A program made the translations under genes and the position numbers. The notes under the pieces were generated by a model. It was not told where the DNA came from and made no database searches. It worked only from the letters and a program-made list of their open reading frames with translations. Below are positions 7,863-63,811 of a DNA stretch of 63,811 bases, in pieces. The first letter of the stretch is position 1. Each line of letters begins with the position of its first letter. Source of the stretch: Vitrella brassicaformis CCMP3155 (taxonomy: Eukaryota > Protista > Chromerida); the NCBI GenBank assembly GCA_001179505.1, contig CDMY01000421.1, positions 16,397 to 80,207 of the forward strand, given 5' to 3'.

Positions 7863-8882
7863 CCACACACACAGACAGGCAGATATATGGCGCGTGTAAA
7901 GAGGTGGATACTGGGCTGATGTGGCTGGATGGGTGTCCGTGTGTGTTGGTGCGCTGACTGTAGAGTAGCGAGTGGCCCCGTGACACATTGAGTGGGCGTC
8001 ATCACTCTTTGTGTCAGGTGGCCATCGAGCAGCCGACAGGCGGCACACAACACACGCCATGCAGCACATAAAGGAAAGAAGAGGCAGCTGCTTGTTTCTT
8101 TATTTCATGGCACTTTCAGACCTCTCTATCGCTCAGACCTCTCTGCCGCTGCGTGTGTGCCGACTCGTGTGCGCATCGATGGATGTGTAAATAATCATTT
8201 GCGCCTCTTGGCGGTGGTCTTCTTGCCTCTTTCTCGACAGACACAACTGGAGAGTTCGCATCTGTTGCAGGTTAATTTTTTATGACGGCATCGGGGGATG
8301 AGCCCGTGCTTCGCCGATCAGCTGCTTTCCGTTTACATCGTGACTCAACCTCGCCAAGCAAACTCGCCTTTTCGTCGCAAAACACCGTCAGAATGGTTCA
8401 TCTCAGGACAATGTCATGACAAACAAAATGTCTGTATTTCTCCGTTCATTCACAGAGAGGTTCTTCGTCATCTTGCGGTCATTTTGAGCCATGAATGGTC
8501 GGTTTGGATGGCTGATTTGAGTCTCTTTGGGAGGTGACCCGGTTATCCGGTCCGTTTTTGATTGTGTACAGAGTGATTCAGCCCAGCTGACCCACATACG
8601 CAACTGACCCGCTTATAAGGTCCGGACTGTAGCTTTGGAAGGGTGAAGGCGTTTGTGTAGGCGTATAGAGACGTCCCTTGACGGATGGCTGCGCAGGCAA
8701 CGAGCAGAAACACTGCTCTCCAAGCAGAGCAGAGCAAGCCAAGTCCCCCTTACCCCCACCCACAATCTCCCCCAAACCAGTCCACTTCATCCCCATCATC
8801 AACCCCTAATACTCTACACCTCACCCCACCGACCACACACACACGGCATACACACCAGCGGTGTGCTATGGGCTATGGTGTA

Positions 8883-9706
8883 TTATGTGGGCCCGTTCAT
8901 GAGGCCCTCCTCCATCGCTGCCGCCGATGCGTCCAAGGCAGGCGGACCTCCACCGGCACTAGCGCCCATGGCCACGGCACTGCCGCCGCTGCCGCCGCCG
9001 CCCAAGACGCCTACACGACCACACACACACACAGAGAGACAGAGAGAGACACAGACAGAGATGGAAGCACCCCCGACACAACCCTCCCCAGCCTCCCTCC
9101 TCACCAGGCTCTCTCATACTGCTGTCGCTGTCAGACGGGCCGGCTGCTGCTGCTGCTGCTGCTGCTGCCGCAGATGCAGAGGACGCTTGGTTGTTGTTGT
9201 TGTTGTTGTCACCGTCCTCCAAATTCTCCTGAAAGCGTCACACGTGAATGACACAATCGCCGGGTGGGTGTCTTGTTCGTCCGAGGGGAGGAGTCTCACT
9301 GGCTCACCCAGCTGCCTTCGACGCATTTGGCGACCCGCCGGTTGTACTCCCTCCGGTTCTCTGAGAACAGCTGAGCTGCCTCCTGCACACACATGGACAC
9401 ACACACATGGTGACGCCCACCCCACCCACAGCCACAAACCAGGCCTGTCTCTGTCGGTCGGTGTGGTTGGGGCTGTCAAGACGGTTTACCACATTGGCGG
9501 GCGAGTTGGGGTTGGGGTCTGACAGGAGCGACTGCAACACACACACACACACACACACACGCAGACGCACTCATGCAGGGAGGGATGCACTCGTGTGTGT
9601 GTGTGAGGATGCACTGACCTGGATGGATGTGAGGATGGCCGACACGTCGTAGATGGGGCTCCACTGGTTCTGCAGTATGTCCAGGCAGATCTGCCCGTCC
9701 GCATAC

Positions 9707-9738
<32 letters not shown>

Positions 9739-9966
9739 GTCAGTGACACACAACACAGCTGCTGGGCGCCGTGCGTTCGCACGCACCGTTAGGATGGAAC
9801 ATTTTGGTGGAGAACATGACTGTCGGCGGTTTGTTTGGGTAGTCCTCGGTGAACTTGAAGTCGAGCTGGAACGTACCCCCCTCCCAAGGCGTGTCCTCGG
9901 GCCTTCAACACACAATGCCCCCCACACACGGCCGTGTGTGCATCTTTATCTCCCTCCCCCGCCCGA

Positions 9967-10004
<38 letters not shown>

Positions 10005-10233
10005 TGCCTGGCGTACCCGAAGATGACGGCGTGCCAGTGCATGATGTCCCCGTCGAGGGGCGCACCCGACACGCCGTGTGGGGGGTCATTGCTGATCTTC
10101 TTGAAGTCGCGAATCAAACGCCGCCGCTGAGATATATGTGAGAGAGAGCAACACACACACAACAGAGAGTGGTGGCGAAGGACTGATGTGTCGGGGGGAG
10201 GGAGGGTGGGGTCTTTACAGCGTATGTCGCCAT
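8883..10233 (-). CDS. UBC2: Ubiquitin-conjugating enzyme E2 (RAD6/UBC2) with low-complexity C-terminal tail
   Basis: MATYA|[18 protein letters not shown]|[15 protein letters not shown]|[30 protein letters not shown]|[30 protein letters not shown]. Two further exons add a poly-N/A/G tail. Stop TAA at 8883-8885. Confidence 0.96.
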
Positions 10234-10532
10234 CCTCGATACGCAGATGCTTCTTGTGCGTACGCTTGACGCCCTCTTGACAATTTGTGCGGTCGTACAC
10301 ACCCACACAGTCGAGTCGTGTAGACAGACGCCTCTACCAACGCAACGCAACCAACTCTGTGCTATCAACAGAGGCAACAGACTGACGTGCTCTTAACTGC
10401 TGCCAACACACCAAAACCCGACGATCTATTTGCGAGCTCGGAGAGGAGGAAGGCGAGAAGCAGCGTGGCACCACAAAAGCAGCTTCACACCCATCCGTCC
10501 GCCCATCCATTCATCGGTCAAGATCAGTCCTG

Positions 10533-10628
10533 ATGAGTTTTCGCGGCCGAGGTGGAAGAGGAGCTCGGTCAGTCAGCAAATCAATCAACGTGACGATACA
10601 TGGACGGCATCCACACACTGCCCTCGCC

Positions 10629-10660
<32 letters not shown>

Positions 10661-11662
10661 GACTCATTGCATCTTTCTCAGGGGAGGCAGAGGTGGCTCT
10701 GACAGAGGCGGCGGTTTCCGCGGCCGAGGAAGGGGCCGGGGCGGAGGGGGCTACCAGCCCTCAGGACCTCCCAGCGAGATACAGGCAAGTACCAAAACAG
10801 ACAGCACAGCCATCCACACACAGAGGTCGGTTGGGTGTGCGTCTGTCTGCAGGAGTTGGGTGTGTTTCTGCATCCGTGTGAGGGCGAGTTGGTGTGCCAG
10901 AGCAGCCTGGCGCAGCGGGTGGCCTACTTCAACGGCCGGGTCTTCCTCGAGAATAAGGAGGAGATCGGCAAGGTCGACGAGATACTCGGACCTATCAACC
11001 AGGTCGGTGTCGGTCGACCCCTGAGGTGTTGATCGATGCACATAACACGACAGACACTGGTGCGTGGCTGATGGACGGACATGTGTGTCTGTGTGTCAGT
11101 CTTTCTTCTCGGTCAAGTTGGCAGAGGGCATGGTGGCCACCTCCTTCGCGCCAAACACCAAGGTCTGTCTGCCTGCCGGCCTGCCTGTCTGTCTGTGCCT
11201 GCCCCCTCGTCCACCCATTCGGCTGTCCTTATGCGCAGGTGTTCATCGACCCCCAGCAGACTCTGCCGCTAGAGCGGTTCCTTTCCAAACCCCCAATACA
11301 GAAGGGGCAGAAGAAGCCAAAGTCACAAGGTACCCCCCCTCCCCGCCGTACACCCACACTCCAACCTGCCTCTCCGCTGCCTGTGGACAGATGGATCTTC
11401 GCGTGGAGGCAGGGGCGGCCGCGGCGGGTCTTTTCGGGGCCGAGGGGGCGACAGAGGCTCGTTCAGGGGCAGAGGGGGCAGGTACGCCCACGACCCACCT
11501 CACTCATCCACTCACAAGCATCCACTGCATGGTCTGTCTGTCTGTCTGTCCAGCGGCTCACGAGGGAGGGGCGGTCGGGGCGGCTTTGACAGAGGTGGTG
11601 GGTCATTCCGCGGGCGGGGTGGTGGGGGAGGGTCGTTCAGGGGCAGGGGCAGGGGCGGGTAG
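10533..11662 (+). CDS. GAR1: H/ACA snoRNP subunit GAR1
   Basis: RGG-rich ends flank the core [11 protein letters not shown]...[28 protein letters not shown]...FFSVKL...[15 protein letters not shown]. Stop TAG at 11660-11662. Confidence 0.95.
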
Positions 11663-12219
11663 ATTGGCATTCATTCATTCAGACAGACGCAGAAAGAGAT
11701 GCACCGATGGCTGGATGCTATTAGTGACAGACCGAGAGAGGGAGAGAGGGAGCCTTGTGAATGGGTGAGTGTGGCTGCCTGCACGGCGAGTAGTGGCGGG
11801 GGCTGAGGTTGTCCTGTTGCGCTGTCAGCAGCAGCTGCATCATAGAGAAGTGAAGAGAGCAAGGCAGACCTACAAGCACCTTTCTCTATGCGTGACGAGA
11901 CGCTCATAAATGTGTGCCAGCCGGGGGATATCTCGCCCTCTAAAGTAGCTCGGAAGGCCTACACTGCCCGCACATAATATCAATATGACAACAGCAAACT
12001 CAGCAAACTGGACGTTGGAGCGAGAGTCGCGAAGATCCCGTGAGCTCGCGATCGAACGCCCAATTCCCGACTGAAATCCTGTTTCTGAGCCCACTTACGG
12101 CTCTCAGACCGTCCCCTGTCTGCGCGTGCTGTCCCTGTCCCCCTGTGCAACAACTTGACCGCTTCAGGCGAGACGGCATACCTTGGGGCTCAGCCGTCTC
12201 CTTCGTGTTTCATTGCAGG

Positions 12220-13037
12220 ATGGTGGCTAAAGCGGCGTCGACTGCTGCAGCCCTTGTGCTGCTGCTGGTACTGGCGGCATCTGTCAGCGTGTGCGCCTCT
12301 GCGACGCACTTCAAGGGCGCCAACCCGCTCAAGGGTGTGACTGACCCACAGGATGTCTCCAGCCTTGATTTCATTGGGCTGTGTGTATGTTTCTCCGATA
12401 CCTGCCAGGTGGGACTCTCAGCATGGCGGCCGTCGGTGTGAACGGCACACAGCCTCGCGACCCCTGCAACACAATGGTAAACGACCAGAAGTGCCGTTAC
12501 GTCGACACCTCGGGAGAAACGACGTGCGGCAAGCACCCCGACCTCGGGTACAAGTGCAAGTGCACCGACGGCAGCTGCAAGACCCCGGTGCGCACACACA
12601 CTCGCATATCACACACAATGAGCATCATGTCTCTGGCTGGGTACATACCCGTCGTCTCTACTTCGCCAGGCTGCCTACAAACACCTCCTCACCGATACGT
12701 CCGCTGCCGAGCCCCCGGCCACCCGCACGGCTGCCACCCGCACTGCCAGTCGCCCTGCCACCTCCCAGCAGCCCGCCCAGCAGCGCCAGCGAAGGACTGG
12801 CGCCACAGCTCTCACGGTCAACGAGCAGCTGGAGAAAGAAGAGGCGTGTAAGTCTTACACGCAGAAGTGCCGCCGGGCGAGTCCAGGCCAAAGTGCGGCA
12901 CTTACCACGGATACACGTGCACATGCAACGAGGGCGGATACTGCGTGGTATGTAGGAGGGCGAATCACCACCACTATAAACGGTCTCACTGTCTCTCATG
13001 CAATGTGTCGCGGGTGTGTGTGTGTATGGTGCAGTGA
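12220..13037 (+). CDS. Small secreted protein with two 6-Cys (EGF-like) repeats; apparent 1-nt frameshift in repeat 2
   Basis: Signal peptide MVAKAASTAAALVLLLVLAASVSVCASA. Repeat 1 is PCNTMVNDQKCRYVDTSGETTCGKHPDLGYKCKCTDGSC. Repeat 2 is ACKSYTQKC/PGESRPKCGTYHGYTCTCNEGGYCV and needs one extra base at 12870-12872. Confidence 0.65.
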
Positions 13038-57263: not shown

Positions 57264-57881
57264 TCACCGGTTTGCCGGCGCTGGTGCTGTCAGTCTATCC
57301 AGCACAGCACGCACCAGCTTCTGCAGCAGCTCCAATATGCCTTCGCTGGCAGCAGGAGGCGAATCTGGGGCGTCCAATACCGACACTGGCCGTGTCTTTG
57401 GTGCCTCAGCAGCTGTGGCGCTTGCCGCTTCTCTCAACCGCTCCTGCTTATTCTCGTCTCCTTTCAGGCCACACGAGTCATCCTTTGCTTTGTTCTTGCT
57501 CGTCTCTTTCTTGGGCTTCCCCTCTTTCTTCCTCTCCGGCTGTGCCGCCGCCTTCTGCTCATTGTTAGGTGTTGGCGGCCGCGATTGTGTGGGTATGGGT
57601 GTGCCGTCAGTGAGTGAGTAGGCCGGCCCACCGATCTGCTGCTCCGTCGTGGAGTCCCACCGCAGATTAGACGCCCGGTTATCGTCCACATTGCCATTCA
57701 GATGGACGAAGTTGAGAGACAGCATGTGGTGGGACTCGTACCTCCACAAGTGCTCCAGCTCCCTCTCGCGATGCACCAGGGCAACCAAGTTGGCGACGGG
57801 GACGCCTGTCTTGGCCTTCCGAAGGCACCAGGTCGTCTTTTTCATGCCCCACGTCGTATTTGTGTTCCCCAATGTTGTCTT
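57264..57881 (-). CDS. HNH-endonuclease-motif (HNH_3-like) exon
   Basis: PVANLVALVH...FVHLNGNVDDNRASNLRW matches the V-H-R-L-V-A...H-x-N-G...D-N-R-x-x-N-L-x-W pattern. It is preceded by a clear acceptor (tacacacag|aag at 57882). A possible donor (CG|GTGAGA) at the 3' end means it may continue further. Confidence 0.75.
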   Translation of the reverse strand, partial: KTTLGNTNTTWGMKKTTWCLRKAKTGVPVANLVALVHRERELEHLWRYESHHMLSLNFVHLNGNVDDNRASNLRWDSTTEQQIGGPAYSLTDGTPIPTQSRPPTPNNEQKAAAQPERKKEGKPKKETSKNKAKDDSCGLKGDENKQERLREAASATAAEAPKTRPVSVLDAPDSPPAASEGILELLQKLVRAVLDRLTAPAPANR

Positions 57882-58080
57882 CTGTGTGTATATTAAGGAG
57901 GCAATGGATGGACGAAGACTGGGTGTTTGTTGATTCGTCTGTCATTCGTTCATGCACTGACACAACGAATGCATGAACGCACGGACTCATGTACATTTGT
58001 CTGCGTGCTCAACAAGAGCCACCAATTGCATTGTCTGTCGTCTGCGATTCTGTCCTGTGCCACTTGACACACAAGCTCAT

Positions 58081-59974
58081 TCATGCCTCGAAATGGTAAT
58101 CCGCCTCCTGACAGAACAAAAGACGACCAGACACACGCACCAAAACAGACACATGCACCACACGTAACACATGGATGTGCATATCATCCCTCACCTTGCT
58201 GGCTCTGAACGCTTCGGCAGCCACTCTGGCCTCCTCGACGTTGCCATTGTAGTTCTTCGGGTTGAAGTAGGCGTACCGCTGCTGCGCGCCCTCGTACCAC
58301 GTGACCACCCACCTCTTCCTCGCCTTCCCCCAGCTGACACCCGTCACCTCGCTGCGCGGCACGCCCTCCTTCGCCTTGCCCTTGCCGTTCCTGCGCGGCC
58401 CGTAGCCGGCCCACATCTCACGCGCTGCTTCTTCTGCCAGTGCCTGATAACCAAAAACGTCATTTGTCCCTCCTCCAATGCCTACCCATTACGTGTCTCT
58501 CGTCTTTCCACCTGTGCCTGTTCAGGTGGGAGGTGTCGTGTGATCTTGAACAGACGCCCTGGGATTTTGCCCCTCTGGTTGTTTGGTGGTTGTGCAAGCC
58601 AGGCGTTGTCGCGTTTGACGAACGACACTCCCGGTACGTCGGACTTGTACACACCTGATGAGATCACGGCCTTCCCCTTGGGCTTGCCGGTGCCCAGGGG
58701 GTGGGGCGTGGGGTTGGTGATGTACACGCGATGCTGTCCGCAGTGACGCATGGCCATGTCACGATCCGATCGCGGCGGCATGACTGAACACACAACACAC
58801 ACACACACGCCAACCGCCGTGGGGCTCTGATGATTGTCACCCGCGCCCCATTACCTATCTTGTCATCCTTGTGTTGCTCTTTCTTCAGCTCTTTCTCCAA
58901 CATCTCGGGAACGTCGGCAAGTCGAACACGGTCCCTCTGTGGATTGACGCATCCAGGGATGTGCCATGTTGCGGGCCTTTGTTTTTCTGGAGTCATATTA
59001 CCCTCAATCTCTGTGCGATGGTCCCTCCCTCCCTATCCGCCGCGCCGACCTGGCCCTCAGAGCTCACGCAATCACGACCCTCCTGCACACACAGACCCAC
59101 ACACACCACCCACACACCAACACAGATCACACCACCACCACCCCCTTCCCCCCCCCCCCACACACACAAAGGCTGTTGACGTGTGTGTTAGTGTGCTGTG
59201 GTGGTGTGTGGTCGCCTGATGGATCATTGTCTCACTGGTGCGTCAGCGTCTGTGTGTGGCTGCCGTGCAGTCGTCTGTGGTACCTGCTTTGGGCTGTCGA
59301 CGCCCGTGTGTGTGTTGGACAGGTAGTAGCGGTTGTTGCCCTTCTTGACGATGAAGCATGCCGCCACCAACTCATCCAAACAATCTGACCACGGAAACAT
59401 ACACACGGAGGGAGAGAGGGATGTGTGTGAGTGTGTGTGAGTGTGTGTGAAGGTGTGTAGTGTGGGTGTGTGCCGTTGCGAACCGTCCATCTGTTGCTGT
59501 GTGTGGTTAGGGAATGCCTCCAACAGCTTCTTCTTGACTGCACTCACACACACGTCAAGTGAATGGCAATTGGTGGCTGGCTGTTTCCTGCCAGGCACCA
59601 TCGGGGCTATGTGGTCGCTTCTTGCGGTTGCGGGGCTTCTGCGGCTGGTCGTCTGCGATCTCCTCCCCCGCCCCATTCATGTGGATGTCATCAGCGTCAT
59701 GATCATCATCGCGGCTCGGGGCAGACGACGATGCCACGGCCAGTGTGGGGTGCTCTGCGAGGCGTGGGCTGCGGCGGGGCGGGGGAGGGGCGGATGCAGC
59801 TGTGTGCAATGTGGGCGGGTGGTTGAGCTCCACCGTCTGCGCATCCACCTCCATCGGGGCCGCACCAGCAGCATCATCATTCATGGTGGGTTGCTGTTGG
59901 GCTTCTCGCCACGCCGCAATGATGGCATCGAGATCTGGCGGAAACCTGTACCAGCGGCCTACCTCCTCAGTCAT
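58081..59974 (-). CDS. ApiAP2-type protein with two AP2 domains
   Basis: AP2-1 is SDVPGVSFVKRDNAWLAQ...RLFKI...EQAQ|ALAEEAAREMW. AP2-2 is SEVTGVSWGKARKRWVVTWYEGAQQRYAYFNPKNYNGNVEEARVAAEAFR. Upstream exons start at MTEEVGRW (59974), but some internal exons are uncertain. The end is either EADYHFEA* at 58081 or a splice into the HNH exon. Confidence 0.8.
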
Positions 59975-60042
59975 CTGAAAGTGCGATTACTCAGTCGAAA
60001 CAAAGTCAAAACCGCCTCTCTGTAAATTGTCGTTCGCATCTC

Positions 60043-60050
60043 AGCTCGCA
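60043..60050. promoter_or_regulatory. Candidate promoter motif YGCGAGCT/AGCTCGCR (representative site)
   Basis: The same 8-mer occurs in 11 of 13 upstream or divergent intergenic intervals in the window (see findings). Confidence 0.55.
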
Positions 60051-60052
60051 GA

Positions 60053-62771
60053 ATGTCAGACCCAGAGCTGCCAGACCCTGAGGAAGGAGACCGCGGCATC
60101 TATGAAAGTGCCAACCTCCTCGTCCCGGATGCGCCGAGTCCGTTAGGAGATCTTCCTCACTCAGATGCGATTGAATCTCTTTTCGACGCCTCGCTGCGGC
60201 TGCCGGGGATGCTTATCCGCCTGCTCCAGCTATGCCCTCAGCCCCTTCGCACTGCGCTTGAGTCCCACATTCGCAAGCTGGCTGACGGGAAGCGTCTAGA
60301 GGCCTACCTGGGCGGCATGATCGCTCTCCTGCAGTGAGCATTGAACATGGAATCATCACCGACACACCAGCACTGTCATGAGCGTTGTCCATCTGTGCGT
60401 TTCCCGTTGTCTCAAGCGGTGGGGTCCGCCCACTCCTGCCAGTGGAGTGGCCGTTTGAGTTCAACACGACGCGTTGCATGTTCGAAGACACGCGGGTCAA
60501 GAACGAACCGGTCCACCCAACACTCGATGAGCAGGGGATTCTACCCGCCGGCATGTGGCCCACCCATAGGCTGGTACAGAGGCTGAGGCGACCCGCATAC
60601 ACATTGTCCATCAACCATGTCGCTTGCAGGACGCGATGACTCCGCGTGTGATCGAGTACGCCAACACGCTTGAGGCCACGGCAGGTGTCGCCGTGCAGTC
60701 GCAGTGGCAGCAGATCCTGGCTTATTACAAGGTCGAGGGCATTACCGATTGGGAAGCCCTCCTGCGAGACGCCTGCGCGTCTGAGGATGAGCTCCTGAGG
60801 CCGCGTAAGCCTGAAGGTCAGCATTGAGAGGGAAGGAATGCACAATCACGAATACACACAAACACACACGGCTGTGCATCACATGTGTGTGTGTGTGTCT
60901 CAGAGCGTATCTCCGCGCTCAACCGTCTGTGGACGCTGGGCGGCATTGCGGCGCTTATTGTGGCCATTGGTGACTTCCCTGTCGGCCTCGACCCCAAGAA
61001 GCTATCACCGTGGGTTCGACACCTGCTCTCGGGTCTCACATCATTGCCTGTGTCCAAGGACGACGTAGAAATGACGAGCGAGGTTAGTCACAGTCCGGGC
61101 GACACTGCCGCCCACATACCGCCGCGACGCCGTGTTGATTTGTGTATCTGATTGTAGGATGTCAAGGCTGCGATGATCGAGGGAACTTCCGCAAGCCTCA
61201 CACCGAGGATCAAAAAGGCAGTCGCAAGTGGGGTCGTCCGTCGACATGGCGCATGGAATGCAAACAAAGTCCAGAAGGCTTTGGGTGTGTGTGTGTTGCT
61301 CACTTTAGGTGTGTGTGTGTTGAACCAGCTGGCGGAAGTAGGCACGCCAGCCCATCGTGAGGTGAGGTACAGACTGGAGAACACTGTGGCCCATTGGAAT
61401 CTCGTTAGCGGCATGGCCGTCATCAAGCGCGGTCAGTAGTATAATTAAATCCCACCGTGTGTGGGTAACACTAGATCTTGTGTTGATCTTGTCCTCACAC
61501 AGGTATGCAACTGCACGCCGGGGCTACGCTTTATCAGCTAGGCATCATCACTGAGGCGGCTGCCACCATCTGGACGACTCATCTGTCCTTCCGGCCAGAG
61601 GACAGGCTCAAGATGGACACGCCGGACGACCTGTGGGGAATGCCTGTCACGGACGCGTTAGCGACAGGTCGGTCACTGCGACTGGCAGCAAGAGTCTGCA
61701 CACACAGAGAAGGGAAGGACACAGACAGAAGTCCATCCATCCATTGCCTCTGACTGTGTGCACGATATTGCTTCCCGATGGGCCGCCTGCAGGTCGTGTG
61801 TCACTCCTCGCAGACGAGAATTCAAGATGGCCGCGCCGTGGCGCACTCGCCATTGCCACCGTTGAGCAGGAGGGCGTTGCAAGGAGGGTTCACAAGTGGG
61901 ACATCTTCGACGTAGTGTTTGCCAGTAAGCACCACACCGAGACAGAGGGCCAGCGGGGCATCAGCACATGCGCTCGGTCCGTTCCCTCTTCTGTCAGCTA
62001 AGGGCTTTCCCCCCGATGCCCTCAGGAATCTGCTCATACGTATGGCCCACACGCTCACACCGCGACTGGTGGTAAGACGGCAAGAACAGAGGCGACACGC
62101 GCAATGACACACGGGCAGATGTCGGGTCGTCTCTGCAGGTTTTCCACCTCGGCGATGGCGACGTCCATGGTCTCGATATCGGCCTGGGTCTCGCTGCGCG
62201 ACTGAAGCCCCACAAGATCGAGGTCAACTGGCTCGCCGTGTCAGCTGAGCAGGTCAAACAGTGGAAAAAGAAGGTATGCCCAGGAAACAGTATCGCGCTT
62301 GCACAGCTGTGCTGGGTTCACGTCTGTGCTGTATGTGCACCCTGCCTCAGTTTGACTTGCAGGCGAAGAAATGCAGCGAGGCTGACATGGAGAAGACCGA
62401 GGCTCTGCTGCGTGGCCCCGTCATTGCGCACGAGGGGCGAGACGCCTATCAGACGTGGCTGCGGAAGAAGGAAACAAAGGTGACTGCACAAGACGTGCCG
62501 CATGCCTGAAGCAGCACCAATCTTCTATGCTGACTGTGCACACTCAGATGTGGCGTGACCTCCAGCACCAGATAAAGACCATCCGGGAGACGGGGCAACA
62601 GATGAAGCTCGATGTAAGAATGTCAGAGACTAACGGACGTCAACCGACATACAGACAGTGTGGTGATGTCATCAGATGGTGATCGATCGAGTGGATACAG
62701 CGGTGCTAAAAAAGGTGTTTGGAGACCTGGTGGAGAAGAGGCTAGGTGCAGACGTGGACATGACTTCATGA
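60053..62771 (+). CDS. Divergent Spo11/topoisomerase VI subunit A-like protein (about 599 aa, 13 exons)
   Basis: All junctions join in phase (modelled CDS 1800 nt). Motifs in Spo11 order are HREVRY (Tyr at 61368-70), LYQLGIITEAA, IATVEQEG (TOPRIM Glu), FA|TKGFP, VFHLGDGDVHGLDI (DxD), VNWLAV, SEADMEKTEALL and QIKTIRETGQQMKLD. Confidence 0.8.
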
Positions 62772-63538
62772 CACAGGAGGGGAGATGTGTTGAACCCTCC
62801 CGCACTCGACTGCCCTTCTGGTCTTGAGAATGCCGTCAAGTCCCTCATGCGAGATGTCCACATAGCGAAAGCCGGATGGGTATTTCTTGGTGCCGAGAGA
62901 GGCTCGCTGACAGATACATGCACACAGACACACATACACAGACACACACACGGAGATAGAGACCGAGCGAAGATAGAGACCGAGCGAAGACAATACGAAA
63001 GTGAGAATACCTGCCCGCCCTGGCCGTTCAGCCATACAATGCGCCCATGTGAAGAGACCAGCAGCTTCGACTGGAGGTTGGGATATATCGAATTGAAGAG
63101 GCGGGAGGTTCTCGGGTCTTTCAGGATCTCCCCCTCCGCCAACTCCACCCCCGAGTAGGCAGTTTGGTGGTTCATAACGGACACGAAATCCCCACCTGAA
63201 CCGCGTAGGCTGTCTCTGATGGTGGCGGCCGACAGACCCGTTCTTCTTGCCGCCTCCTCTTGGCTGGATACCTTCAGGTCTGGCTGGCCTTGTCGGCGGA
63301 TCACCATCGGGAACCCTGCCGTCGTGCGTGGGGCCTTCTGCACTGATGGCTCTGCAGCTGACGAGAAGCTTCTGCAGTGGCTGTTTGTGTGGCCATGGTG
63401 CCCATGGCGAGGAGGGGAAGAAAGAAAGGAGGGAGCCTCAGGGGAGAGGAGGGCCTCGCAGCCCTCGCTGAAACTTGAAGCTCTTGTCAGCCGTCGGCCT
63501 GCCGCGGTAGCGTGCTTTGCTGTTCTCCAGAAAGCCAT
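62766..63538 (-). CDS. NUMOD1 + NUMOD4-like DNA-binding protein with mitochondrial-type presequence (about 222 aa, 2 exons)
   Basis: Leader MAFWRTAKHATAAGRRLTRASSFS...RSFSS. NUMOD1-like HTH is VSSQEEAARRTGLSAATIRDSL. NUMOD4-like is SIYPNLQSKLLVSSHGRI, followed by |RASLGTKKYPSGFRYVDI. Intron 63010-62907 is in phase 0. Confidence 0.6.
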
Positions 63539-63811
63539 CTTTCTGCACTTGAAGAGGAAAATTGTTGAAGTTGCTGCGTGCCGAACACACACCGTGGTCA
63601 GAAGGATCAATCTCTGCCGTACAAGCCTTTACGCAAGGCACGCAACGCACGAGTCCATCATGGGCATGGCCAGCCCGCCAAGCAAGACACGCACGAGAGC
63701 TGCCAACGCTCACCGAAGATGCACGAAATAGAAAGACATGTCTGCAAGCTAAGCACAAACCCTGCTATCAAAACCCAACACCCCTTCTCACCTCACGGCG
63801 AAGCTGAGAGG

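What the first reader, a model, noticed from the sequence alone, without database searches (positions are those of the whole stretch)
57264..63538. Candidate undescribed three-gene DNA-cleavage module: AP2/HNH <- -> Spo11-like -> <- NUMOD1/NUMOD4
After about 57 kb of housekeeping genes, three tightly packed genes all carry nuclease or homing-endonuclease-associated modules. AP2 and HNH lie on the left, 78 bp from the Spo11-like ATG, the shortest spacer in the window. NUMOD1 and NUMOD4 lie on the right with zero spacer. NUMOD4-HNH-NUMOD1/AP2 is the classic layout of one homing endonuclease (established), and here those parts are spread across the two flanking genes. This suggests a domesticated mobile-element-derived island or a co-regulated system in which sequence-specific binders target a Spo11-type cutter. 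Functional linkage is inference only, and chance adjacency is possible.
Basis: inference. Interest (0 to 1): 0.85.

Follow-up and report, generated by a model that had tools for sequence, protein, structure and literature searches.

The report
Recurring AP2 and Spo11-like gene pair
In the alga Vitrella brassicaformis, a gene for a DNA-binding protein with two AP2 domains sits head to head with a gene for a very divergent Spo11/topoisomerase VI-A-type DNA-cutting enzyme. The same pair recurs at three places in the genome, but the proposed third partner (NUMOD) is not supported and the HNH part is a separate neighbouring gene.

Summary
The window is the end of Vitrella brassicaformis contig CDMY01000421.1.

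**Confirmed**
- The two AP2 domains are real (Pfam 1e-8).
- The Spo11-like gene is real: 13 RNA-confirmed exons, 597 aa, with Tyr312, Glu412 and Asp462/464. Its paralogue's model matches Topo VI-A/Spo11 at Z 10-11. A 59%-identical paralogue passes Pfam TOP6A-Spo11_Toprim.

**Corrected**
- The HNH_3 module is real but is a separate 193-aa gene. The AP2 gene ends in a short exon, as its paralogues do.

**Not supported**
- The 'NUMOD1/NUMOD4' gene matched nothing in any search. It is unannotated, not coding-like, and overlaps the Spo11-like 3'UTR.

So there is no three-gene module.

**New here**
- The head-to-head AP2<->Spo11-like pair recurs at three loci of this genome: the window, CDMY01000396.1, and a truncated copy on CDMY01000477.1.
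- The loci have unrelated flanks. The window and CDMY01000396.1 copies share intron positions and a conserved promoter block.
- This is a two-gene unit duplicated at least twice.

That the two products work together is inference (about 0.35). The 78-bp spacer is ordinary for Vitrella (median 92 bp). The scan had already noted this divergent Spo11-like family on other DNA of this genome. The recurrent pairing with AP2 is what is new.

The parts
57264..57845 (-). Separate single-exon gene for a 193-aa protein (P0004): an N-terminal HNH_3-type module (core about 57639-57707, pattern H-x-N-G-N..D-N-R..N-L-R-W) followed by a Lys/Glu-rich tail.
   Evidence: - Annotated as its own gene.
- Pfam HNH_3 E 0.0036, below cut-off; PHROG HNH endonuclease families at 8.8e-5 and 1.5e-4, plus five more.
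- ESM atlas 0.94-0.95, with 80 of 100 nearest clusters HNH_3.
- Codon usage is coding-like.
- No RNA contig covers it in three runs.
- No counterpart at loci B or C.
58081..59974 (-). Gene for a 413-aa protein with two AP2 domains. Eight exons: 59974-59599, 59537-59484, 59384-59284, 59082-59002, 58936-58855, 58783-58512, 58443-58195, 58107-58081. AP2 #1 is split by the 58511-58444 intron (about 58640-58512 plus the start of the next exon). AP2 #2 is at about 58198-58347.
   Evidence: - Pfam AP2 1e-8, plus a partial hit at 0.0084.
- One intron is confirmed by RNA (58442/58511 joint).
- My splice model gives 413 aa, the same length as the public annotation.
- The C-terminus matches paralogue C's mRNA.
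- Paralogue C's protein has two AP2 stretches, E 4.2e-14.
59975..60052 (.). 78-bp divergent intergenic region, a presumed bidirectional promoter. It contains a block at 60022-60052 (GTAAAT, 13 nt, CAT.T.AGCTCGCAGA) that is shared without gaps with locus B.
   Evidence: - Alignment.
- The 10-mer occurs once in the 63.8-kb window.
- RNA contigs of the + gene begin at 60049 and 60057.
60053..62771 (+). Gene for a 597-aa divergent Spo11/Top6A-like protein. Thirteen exons: 60053-60333, 60417-60573, 60630-60816, 60904-61082, 61158-61227, 61309-61431, 61503-61667, 61793-61924, 61998-62071, 62139-62273, 62351-62479, 62548-62613, 62676-62771. Key codons: Arg308 61356-58, Tyr312 61368-70, Glu412 61864-66, Asp462 62154-56, Asp464 62160-62. 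The first 290 or so residues are an unassigned helical extension.
   Evidence: - All 12 joints are seen in RNA contigs; assembly and translation.
- 39-42% identical over its full length to paralogue P0002.
- Family assignment rests.
62772..63020 (+). 3' untranslated region of the Spo11-like mRNA.
   Evidence: RNA contigs joined to exon 12 by the 62613/62676 joint run on unspliced to 63005-63020, at depth 20-400.
62766..63538 (-). Most likely not a protein-coding gene.
   Evidence: - No family or homologue.
- Codon log-odds of -0.06, like a spurious antisense ORF at -0.11 and unlike real exons at +0.14 to +0.22.
- Not annotated and not conserved at loci B or C.
- The core motif VSxxG[RK][IV] occurs twice in the six-frame translation of the window.
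- Only a low-depth RNA contig (5.5) covers 63089-63607.

Best explanation
The stretch is not a three-gene cleavage module. It is a two-gene unit plus an unrelated neighbour and a spurious ORF.

The unit is a two-AP2-domain gene and a divergent Spo11/Top6A-family gene. They are transcribed divergently from a 78-bp shared promoter. The unit has been copied as a whole at least twice within the Vitrella brassicaformis genome:
- locus A is this window;
- locus B is an old copy on CDMY01000396.1;
- locus C is a younger copy on CDMY01000477.1 that carries an internal deletion.

Shown:
- Both genes are spliced nuclear genes.
- The Spo11-like protein keeps the Arg/Tyr motif and the Glu...Asp-x-Asp metal triad.
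- The pair recurs with unrelated flanks.

Inferred:
- The 597-aa protein acts like Top6A/Spo11. That would be a dimer that breaks DNA through a 5'-phosphotyrosyl link from Tyr312, with Mg2+ held by Glu412, Asp462 and Asp464.
- The pair stays together because the genes share a promoter and are probably co-regulated.
- The AP2 protein physically guides or regulates the cutter. I rate this only about 0.35.

The HNH_3 gene is a separate gene found at this locus only, and may be of selfish-element origin. The 'NUMOD' ORF is the 3'UTR and downstream region of the Spo11-like gene.
For: Gene models:
- RNA joints for all 12 introns of the middle gene.
- A 413-aa AP2 model identical in length to the annotation.

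Family of the middle gene:
- ESM atlas 0.92 with all ten best hits TP6A_N+Toprim, and TM 0.58-0.61 (by the hit) to SPO11 clusters.
- Foldseek on PDB: the top matches are Topo VI-A and Spo11, probability 0.97-1.0.
- VIA Z 11.1 (1d3y), 10.2 (8uru), 8.0 (JetD, MksG), with unrelated rows at 6 or below.
- Most of the best 30 Swiss-Prot matches are Top6A or SPO11 across nearly their whole length.
- Paralogue C (P0005, 59-62% identical to the window protein) scores 29.6 bits on PF21180, above the cut-off of 24.1.
- Catalytic residues are present in A and B.

Recurrence of the pair:
- Locus B: AP2 gene 8344-9783 (-) and P0002 10001-12693 (+).
- Locus C: AP2 gene 8124-9947 (-) and P0005 10001-11283 (+).
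- No other gene is shared between the window and locus B, and the annotated flanking genes differ at all three loci.
- 11 of 12 intron positions and phases are shared between A and B.
- A conserved promoter block is shared by A and B.
- dN/dS of 0.33-0.54 shows purifying selection on both genes.
Against: - The fold evidence comes from paralogue B's low-confidence model (mean pLDDT 53; only the Toprim part is good). It does not come from the window's own protein, which has no reference id.
- The 5Y-CAP domain is not confidently modelled, and Pfam TP6A_N finds nothing.
- A recurring pair can arise passively, because segmental duplications copy neighbours in a compact genome.
- Contig depths suggest the AP2 to Spo11-like RNA ratio varies from about 1:1 to 1:50 or lower among runs (this is a poor measure).
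- In locus C the shared promoter is deleted, yet both remnants are still transcribed.
- Two more paralogues noted by the scan could not be fetched.
Confidence: 0.6

Rival explanations
1. Passive hitch-hiking. The AP2 and Spo11-like genes have no functional relation. They recur together only because each segmental duplication copied a few kilobases of a very compact genome, and both copies happened to be kept.
For: - Median intergenic distance in Vitrella is 92 bp, and AP2 genes are very numerous, including one cluster of 50 homologous genes (PMC4501334).
- RNA depth ratios differ among runs.
- No terminal repeats or sharp duplication borders were found.
Against: - Two separate duplication events both kept both genes, while no flanking gene was kept.
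- A promoter block between the genes is conserved although synonymous sites are saturated (dS 1.2).
Confidence: 0.3
2. This is a three-gene system, co-regulated or derived from a mobile element, in which AP2/HNH and NUMOD1/NUMOD4 binders flank and target a Spo11-type cutter.
For: - HNH_3, AP2 and NUMOD modules do co-occur in phage and giant-virus homing endonucleases, as the cluster architectures listed show.
- An HNH_3 gene does lie 235 bp from the AP2 gene, on the same strand.
Against: - NUMOD has no support from any search and is probably not a gene.
- HNH and NUMOD are absent within 10 kb of the pair at loci B and C.
- HNH is not part of the AP2 gene.
Confidence: 0.05
3. An alternative isoform makes an AP2-AP2-HNH nuclease. 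The donor at 58195 can splice in frame to an AG at 57885/57884, skipping the short last exon, so that HNH is an alternative 3' exon of the AP2 gene.
For: - The frame is open for 32 codons upstream of the HNH ATG, and the junction would be in phase 0.
- The HNH ORF has coding-like codon usage.
Against: - No RNA contig covers 57540-57939 in three runs.
- The intron would be 311 nt, against 56-125 nt for the 12 RNA-confirmed introns of the middle gene.
- Paralogues B and C end just after AP2 #2.
- The public annotation separates the two genes.
Confidence: 0.08
4. The pair is a selfish two-component cassette. The AP2 protein chooses a site, the Spo11-like protein cuts it, and repair copies the cassette to new loci.
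For: - Three copies lie at unrelated loci.
- A-C homology is confined to the two genes and fades just past both stop codons.
Against: - No terminal inverted repeats were found.
- Spliceosomal introns are shared between A and B, and the A-B divergence is old.
- G+C content is the same as the surrounding sequence.
- Vitrella has little transposon DNA (PMC4501334).
Confidence: 0.07

Closest known systems
Spo11 / topoisomerase VI subunit A (type IIB topoisomerase catalytic subunit)
   Same: - Toprim domain of the Top6A type (Z 10-11, measured on paralogue B's model).
- Motifs V-E-x, T-K-G-[FY]-P and G-D-G-D-x-H-G.
- An R-x-V-x-Y motif where Spo11 has its catalytic tyrosine.
- The C-terminal helices after the Toprim core are also matched.
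   Different: - Too divergent for Pfam or PDB sequence searches on the full-length paralogue B.
- It carries an unassigned N-terminal extension of about 290 residues.
- It is present in several copies, in addition to the canonical meiotic set reported for Vitrella (PMC7522995).
- Each fetched copy is paired with an AP2 gene.
- No B-subunit partner is known.
HNH-AP2 homing endonucleases of phages, cyanobacteria and giant viruses (HNH_3 with AP2, NUMOD1 or NUMOD4)
   Same: An HNH_3 module and AP2 domains lie within 1 kb on the same strand. The HNH part resembles the phage type most closely.
   Different: - Here they are two separate spliced or single-exon nuclear genes.
- The order is AP2-AP2 then HNH, the reverse of the viral proteins.
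- The HNH gene is absent at the paralogous loci.
- No NUMOD module could be shown.
ApiAP2 transcription factors of apicomplexans and chromerids
   Same: AP2 domains above the Pfam cut-off. The gene belongs to a family that expanded by duplication in Vitrella.
   Different: It is held head to head with a DNA-cleaving-enzyme gene through two duplications. DNA-binding specificity and role are unknown.
JetD / MksG nucleases of bacterial Wadjet systems
   Same: The same Toprim subtype (Z 8.0). Paralogue C has a weak DUF2399 hit (E 0.0037).
   Different: They score lower than Top6A/Spo11. I recall that JetD lacks a catalytic tyrosine and works with an SMC complex, whereas here the tyrosine motif is kept and no SMC partner lies nearby.

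Membership tests
Top6A/Spo11 | Toprim fold of the Top6A/Spo11 subtype | tested here: met
   In the AF2 model of paralogue B, residues 389-607 match 1d3y_A at Z 11.1, 9o0g_A at 10.8 and 8uru_A (Spo11) at 10.2, with unrelated chains at 6.2 or below. This was tested on the paralogue (39-42% identical), not on the window protein itself.
Top6A/Spo11 | Metal-binding Glu and Asp-x-Asp of the Toprim domain | tested here: met
   Glu412, Asp462 and Asp464 in the window protein; Glu414, Asp478 and Asp480 in B. The motifs are also kept in C. Equivalence to Top6A residues is inferred from motif context and aligned ranges.
Top6A/Spo11 | Pfam TOP6A-Spo11_Toprim (PF21180) at or above the gathering score | tested here: inconclusive
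   - Paralogue C (P0005): 29.6 bits against 24.1, E 8.5e-7.
- Paralogue B, full length: no hit at E up to 10.
- The window protein could only be scanned exon by exon, with no hit.
Top6A/Spo11 | 5Y-CAP (winged-helix) domain carrying the catalytic tyrosine | tested here: inconclusive
   - R-x-V-x-Y-R-L-E-N is conserved in A (Tyr312) and B (Tyr312).
- Foldseek and Swiss-Prot alignments span about 205-609 against nearly whole Top6A/SPO11 proteins.
- ESM-atlas TM is 0.58-0.61.
- Against this, AF2 pLDDT is under 50 in the region and Pfam TP6A_N finds nothing.
Top6A/Spo11 | Covalent 5'-phosphotyrosyl DNA cleavage as a dimer, usually with a B-type subunit | not testable with these tools
   Needs biochemistry.
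AP2 / ApiAP2 | Pfam AP2 (PF00847) at or above the gathering score | tested here: met
   35.8 bits against 33.3 for AP2 #2. AP2 #1 is split by an intron and hits only partly (E 0.0084). The spliced paralogue C protein gives two stretches, E 4.2e-14.
HNH_3 endonuclease | Pfam HNH_3 (PF13392) at or above the gathering score | tested here: not met
   17.4 bits against 24.8. Supporting but weaker evidence: seven PHROG HNH families, best 8.8e-5; atlas 0.94-0.95 with 80 of 100 clusters HNH_3. The AF2 model was too poor to use.
HNH_3 endonuclease | His...Asn...Asn catalytic pattern of the beta-beta-alpha-metal motif | tested here: met
   Read directly from the sequence: V-H-L-N-G-N-V-D-D-N-R-A-S-N-L-R-W at about 57639-57707. 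Activity is untested.
NUMOD1 / NUMOD4 | Match to the Pfam NUMOD1 (PF07453) or NUMOD4 (PF07463) models, or to any homing endonuclease | tested here: not met
   - No hit at E up to 1 in Pfam, PHROGs or NCBIfam.
- Atlas best score 0.68, to unrelated clusters.
- No tblastn hit in 50,697 phage genomes.
- Caveat: the putative NUMOD4 stretch is split by the hypothetical intron, and the joined peptide could not be submitted.
HNH-AP2 homing endonuclease (single protein) | HNH and AP2 in one polypeptide | tested here: not met
   Separate annotated genes of 413 and 193 aa. The paralogue mRNA ends after AP2 #2. No RNA covers the HNH gene. A rare fusion isoform is not excluded.
JetD / MksG | JetD_C/DUF2399-type Toprim as the best match | tested here: not met
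   Z 8.0 for 7til_B and 8b7f_A, against 10-11 for Top6A/Spo11. DUF2399 scores 17.5 bits against 23.4. The tyrosine motif is retained here. That JetD/MksG lack a catalytic tyrosine and work with an SMC complex is from memory, not tested.

The most novel reading that the evidence does not exclude
The two-AP2 protein and the divergent Spo11-like protein form a two-component, sequence-targeted DNA-breaking system. It would be a nuclear, intron-bearing analogue of an AP2-guided homing endonuclease. It is inherited and duplicated as one unit, and possibly makes programmed site-specific breaks in chromerid algae.
Probability: 0.15. Interest if true: 0.85.

Novelty: new variant of a known kind. Interest (0 to 1): 0.5.

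Why it matters
Spo11-type enzymes make the programmed double-strand breaks of meiosis. How they are aimed at particular DNA is an open question. AP2 domains are thought to have entered eukaryotes from homing endonucleases.

A lineage close to apicomplexan parasites keeps extra, catalytically intact-looking Spo11-like genes. Each one fetched is locked head to head with an AP2 DNA-binder gene. That makes a testable candidate for a sequence-guided Spo11-type cutter.

If the pairing proves to be only passive, the result still corrects three gene assignments. It also shows that the family is invisible to standard domain searches.

Tried and rejected
- **Pfam on single exons:** single exon pieces of the middle gene found nothing.
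- **Sequence searches with paralogue B:** phmmer against PDB sequences, and a three-sequence family profile against PDB, found no Top6A.
- **Word-indexed protein search:** with P0002 it returned only itself. With the NUMOD ORF it returned nothing.
- **Exon 10 against 1.84 billion representatives:** only the two Vitrella paralogues, so the family's spread outside Vitrella is unknown.
- **Metagenome scan for relatives:** one call was rejected for lack of conserved columns and the next found none.
- **Mixed alignment of all exon pieces:** the N-terminal exons were misplaced, so it was dropped.
- **AF2 of the HNH protein alone:** unusable, pLDDT 52.
- **Terminal inverted repeats and sharp borders of the duplicated unit:** none found.
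- **L002 as an assembly chimera:** rejected, because it maps exactly onto locus C.
- **Not possible:** the spliced 597-aa and 413-aa window proteins and the joined NUMOD peptide have no reference id, so they could not be sent to any search or folding tool. Paralogues served as proxies.


Full report
**Where the window comes from**

- A protein look-up shows the window is the last 63,811 bases of contig CDMY01000421.1 of Vitrella brassicaformis CCMP3155, assembly GCA_001179505.1.
- Locus L003 is the exact reverse complement of the window's end.
- The public annotation places three genes in the finding's range:
  - a 597-aa product at 60053-62771 (+);
  - a 413-aa AP2 product at 58081-59974 (-);
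  - a 193-aa product at 57264-57845 (-).
- Nothing is annotated between 62771 and the contig end.

**The middle gene**

- Contigs of three RNA runs give GT..AG joints for all 12 introns.
- The 13 exons translate to 597 aa with the stop at 62769-62771.
- No single exon hits a Pfam family.
- By eye the protein carries three groups of motifs:
  - R-E-V-R-Y-R-L-E-N (Arg308, Tyr312);
  - A-T-V-E-Q-E (Glu412) and T-K-G-F-P-P-D;
  - G-D-G-D-V-H-G (Asp462, Asp464).
- The spliced protein has no reference id, so I fished for relatives with exon 10. This gave P0002 (616 aa) and P0001 (150 aa).
- P0002 is 39-42% identical to the window protein over its whole length.

**Evidence that the family is Spo11/Top6A-like**

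- P0002 itself has no Pfam, NCBIfam or PDB sequence match.
- The ESM atlas places P0002 among TP6A_N+Toprim clusters. The score is 0.92, all ten best hits agree, and structural TM is 0.58-0.61 by the hit.
- An AF2 model of P0002 has mean pLDDT 53, with the Toprim part at 70-89.
  - Foldseek on PDB returns Topo VI-A and Spo11 as its only high-probability matches.
  - VIA gives Z 11.1 for 1d3y, 10.2 for 8uru, 8.0 for JetD and MksG, and 6.2 or less for unrelated chains.
  - Most of the best 30 Swiss-Prot matches are Top6A or SPO11, aligned over almost their full length.
- Cluster look-up of P0001 gave P0005, the annotated 243-aa Vitrella product, which is 59-62% identical to the window protein.
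  - P0005 passes Pfam TOP6A-Spo11_Toprim at 29.6 bits against a cut-off of 24.1.
- The Toprim half is therefore well supported.
- The tyrosine-bearing half rests on the conserved motif, the atlas model and the Foldseek alignments. The AF2 model is poor there.
- A survey reports that Vitrella keeps the full canonical meiotic gene set (PMC7522995). These genes are therefore extra paralogues.

**The left gene**

- My splice model has eight exons. One joint is confirmed by RNA at 58442/58511.
- It gives 413 aa ending E-A-D-Y-H-F-E-A-stop in a 27-nt last exon. This equals the annotated length.
- It has two AP2 domains. The first is split by an intron.
- The mRNA of paralogue C ends the same way, E-T-A-H-Y-H-F-A-A-R-stop.
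- Paralogue B also ends just after AP2 #2.
- The HNH exon is therefore not part of this gene.
- The HNH module is the separate 193-aa gene P0004, 235 bp downstream on the same strand.
  - Pfam HNH_3 is below its cut-off, at E 0.0036.
  - Seven PHROG HNH families hit it, the best at 8.8e-5.
  - 80 of the 100 nearest atlas clusters are HNH_3 of phages and giant viruses.
  - Its codon usage is coding-like.
  - No RNA contig covers it.
- An in-frame AP2-HNH isoform is possible on paper but has no support.

**The right 'gene'**

- The ORF at 63538-63011, with or without the hypothetical second exon, matched nothing. I searched Pfam, PHROGs, NCBIfam, the atlas, 5.8 billion proteins and all phage genomes.
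- Its codon log-odds score is -0.06. A spurious antisense ORF scores -0.11, and real exons score +0.14 to +0.22.
- The Spo11-like mRNA runs unspliced to about 63020, through the supposed exon 2 and intron.
- The eye-catching V-S-x-x-G-R-I motif type occurs twice in the window's six-frame translation.
- A low-depth RNA contig covers 63089-63607. Weak transcription therefore exists, but nothing shows a NUMOD protein.

**Linkage**

Both that I could fetch do have an AP2 neighbour.
- Locus B (L001, CDMY01000396.1):
  - A 349-aa AP2 gene lies at 8344-9783 (-), head to head with P0002 at 10001-12693 (+). The spacer is 217 bp.
  - Its AP2 exons are homologous to the window's, at E 1e-9 and 8e-4. The similarity includes the V-M-P-P-R lead-in.
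- Locus C (L004, CDMY01000477.1):
  - A 293-aa AP2 gene lies at 8124-9947 (-), head to head with P0005 at 10001-11283 (+). The spacer is 53 bp.
  - Compared with locus A, a deletion has removed the 5' part of AP2 exon 1, the promoter and Spo11-like exons 1-7.
  - The MMETSP transcript contig L002 maps exactly onto locus C.
- The annotated flanking genes differ at all three loci, and only the two genes are shared between the window and locus B.
- No HNH or NUMOD homologue lies within 10 kb of B or C.
- A and B share 11 of 12 intron positions and phases, so the duplication was at the DNA level. It is old, with dS 1.2.
- A and C are younger copies. Nucleotide homology runs from 58085 to 62771 and fades just past both stop codons. 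There are no inverted repeats.
- dN/dS is 0.33-0.54.
- Upstream of the Spo11-like ATG, A and B share a gap-free block: GTAAAT, 13 nt, CAT.T.AGCTCGCAGA.

**Weighing the linkage**

- Tight spacing is not evidence, because the median intergenic distance in Vitrella is 92 bp. AP2 genes are also very numerous (PMC4501334).
- Recurrence after duplication is not independent evidence of function either.
- Two separate duplications kept both genes and no flank, and a promoter block is conserved. This tilts towards a maintained unit.
- My ratings:

| Reading | Rating |
|---|---|
| Duplicated two-gene unit | about 0.9 |
| The whole best explanation | 0.6 |
| A physical or targeting partnership | about 0.35 |
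| Pure hitch-hiking | 0.3 |
| The three-gene module | 0.05 |

**Comparison with what is known**

- The enzyme works like, and is a distant member of, the Top6A/Spo11 superfamily.
- The AP2 gene is an ordinary member of the chromerid AP2 expansion.
- The HNH gene is a phage-type HNH_3 relative.
- I found no paper describing a Spo11-like gene paired with an AP2 gene.
- Earlier notes of this scan had already flagged the divergent Spo11-like family elsewhere in this genome. The recurrent pairing is the new element.

Noticed in passing
L004:9900-10450 (locus C) and L002: In the truncated copy, the first 35 residues of the annotated Toprim-only protein P0005 are read from DNA that is antisense to the remnant of AP2 exon 1. 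One transcript contig spans both genes, spliced in both directions. The two mRNAs therefore appear to overlap at their 5' ends.
   Followed up: partly
L001:11951-12201 (locus B): The annotated P0002 model has a 251-nt exon with a 16-residue insert exactly where locus A has its intron after codon 456. This is probably an unspliced in-frame intron in the public model.
   Followed up: partly
window:59284-59537: The AP2 protein has a short motif upstream of its AP2 domains (..K-K-L-L-E-A-F-P.., ..D-C-L-D-E-L-V-A-A-C-F-I-V-K-K-G-N-N-R-Y-Y-L-S-N). It is conserved with paralogue C but not detectably with B. By eye it looks like a winged-helix wing, and no family was assigned.
   Followed up: no
window:60022-60052 and L001:9941-9975: A conserved, gap-free promoter block lies just upstream of the Spo11-like start codon in two loci whose synonymous sites are saturated. 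It is a candidate core promoter or regulator site.
   Followed up: partly
L001:4418-6598: Two tandem genes with the RNase P/MRP p29 domain (255 and 191 aa) lie upstream of locus B, with near-identical sequence blocks.
   Followed up: no
window:63089-63811: A low-depth RNA contig (depth 5.5 in run X8) covers 63089 to at least 63607, right at the contig end and beyond the Spo11-like 3'UTR. It could be read-through or an unannotated transcript cut by the assembly end.
   Followed up: no
window:58790-58810, 59397-59456, 60885-60902, 61279-61322, 62914-62962: GT-rich microsatellites inside introns attract foreign contigs and false joints in the DNA run X3. They should not be read as rearrangements.
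   Followed up: no
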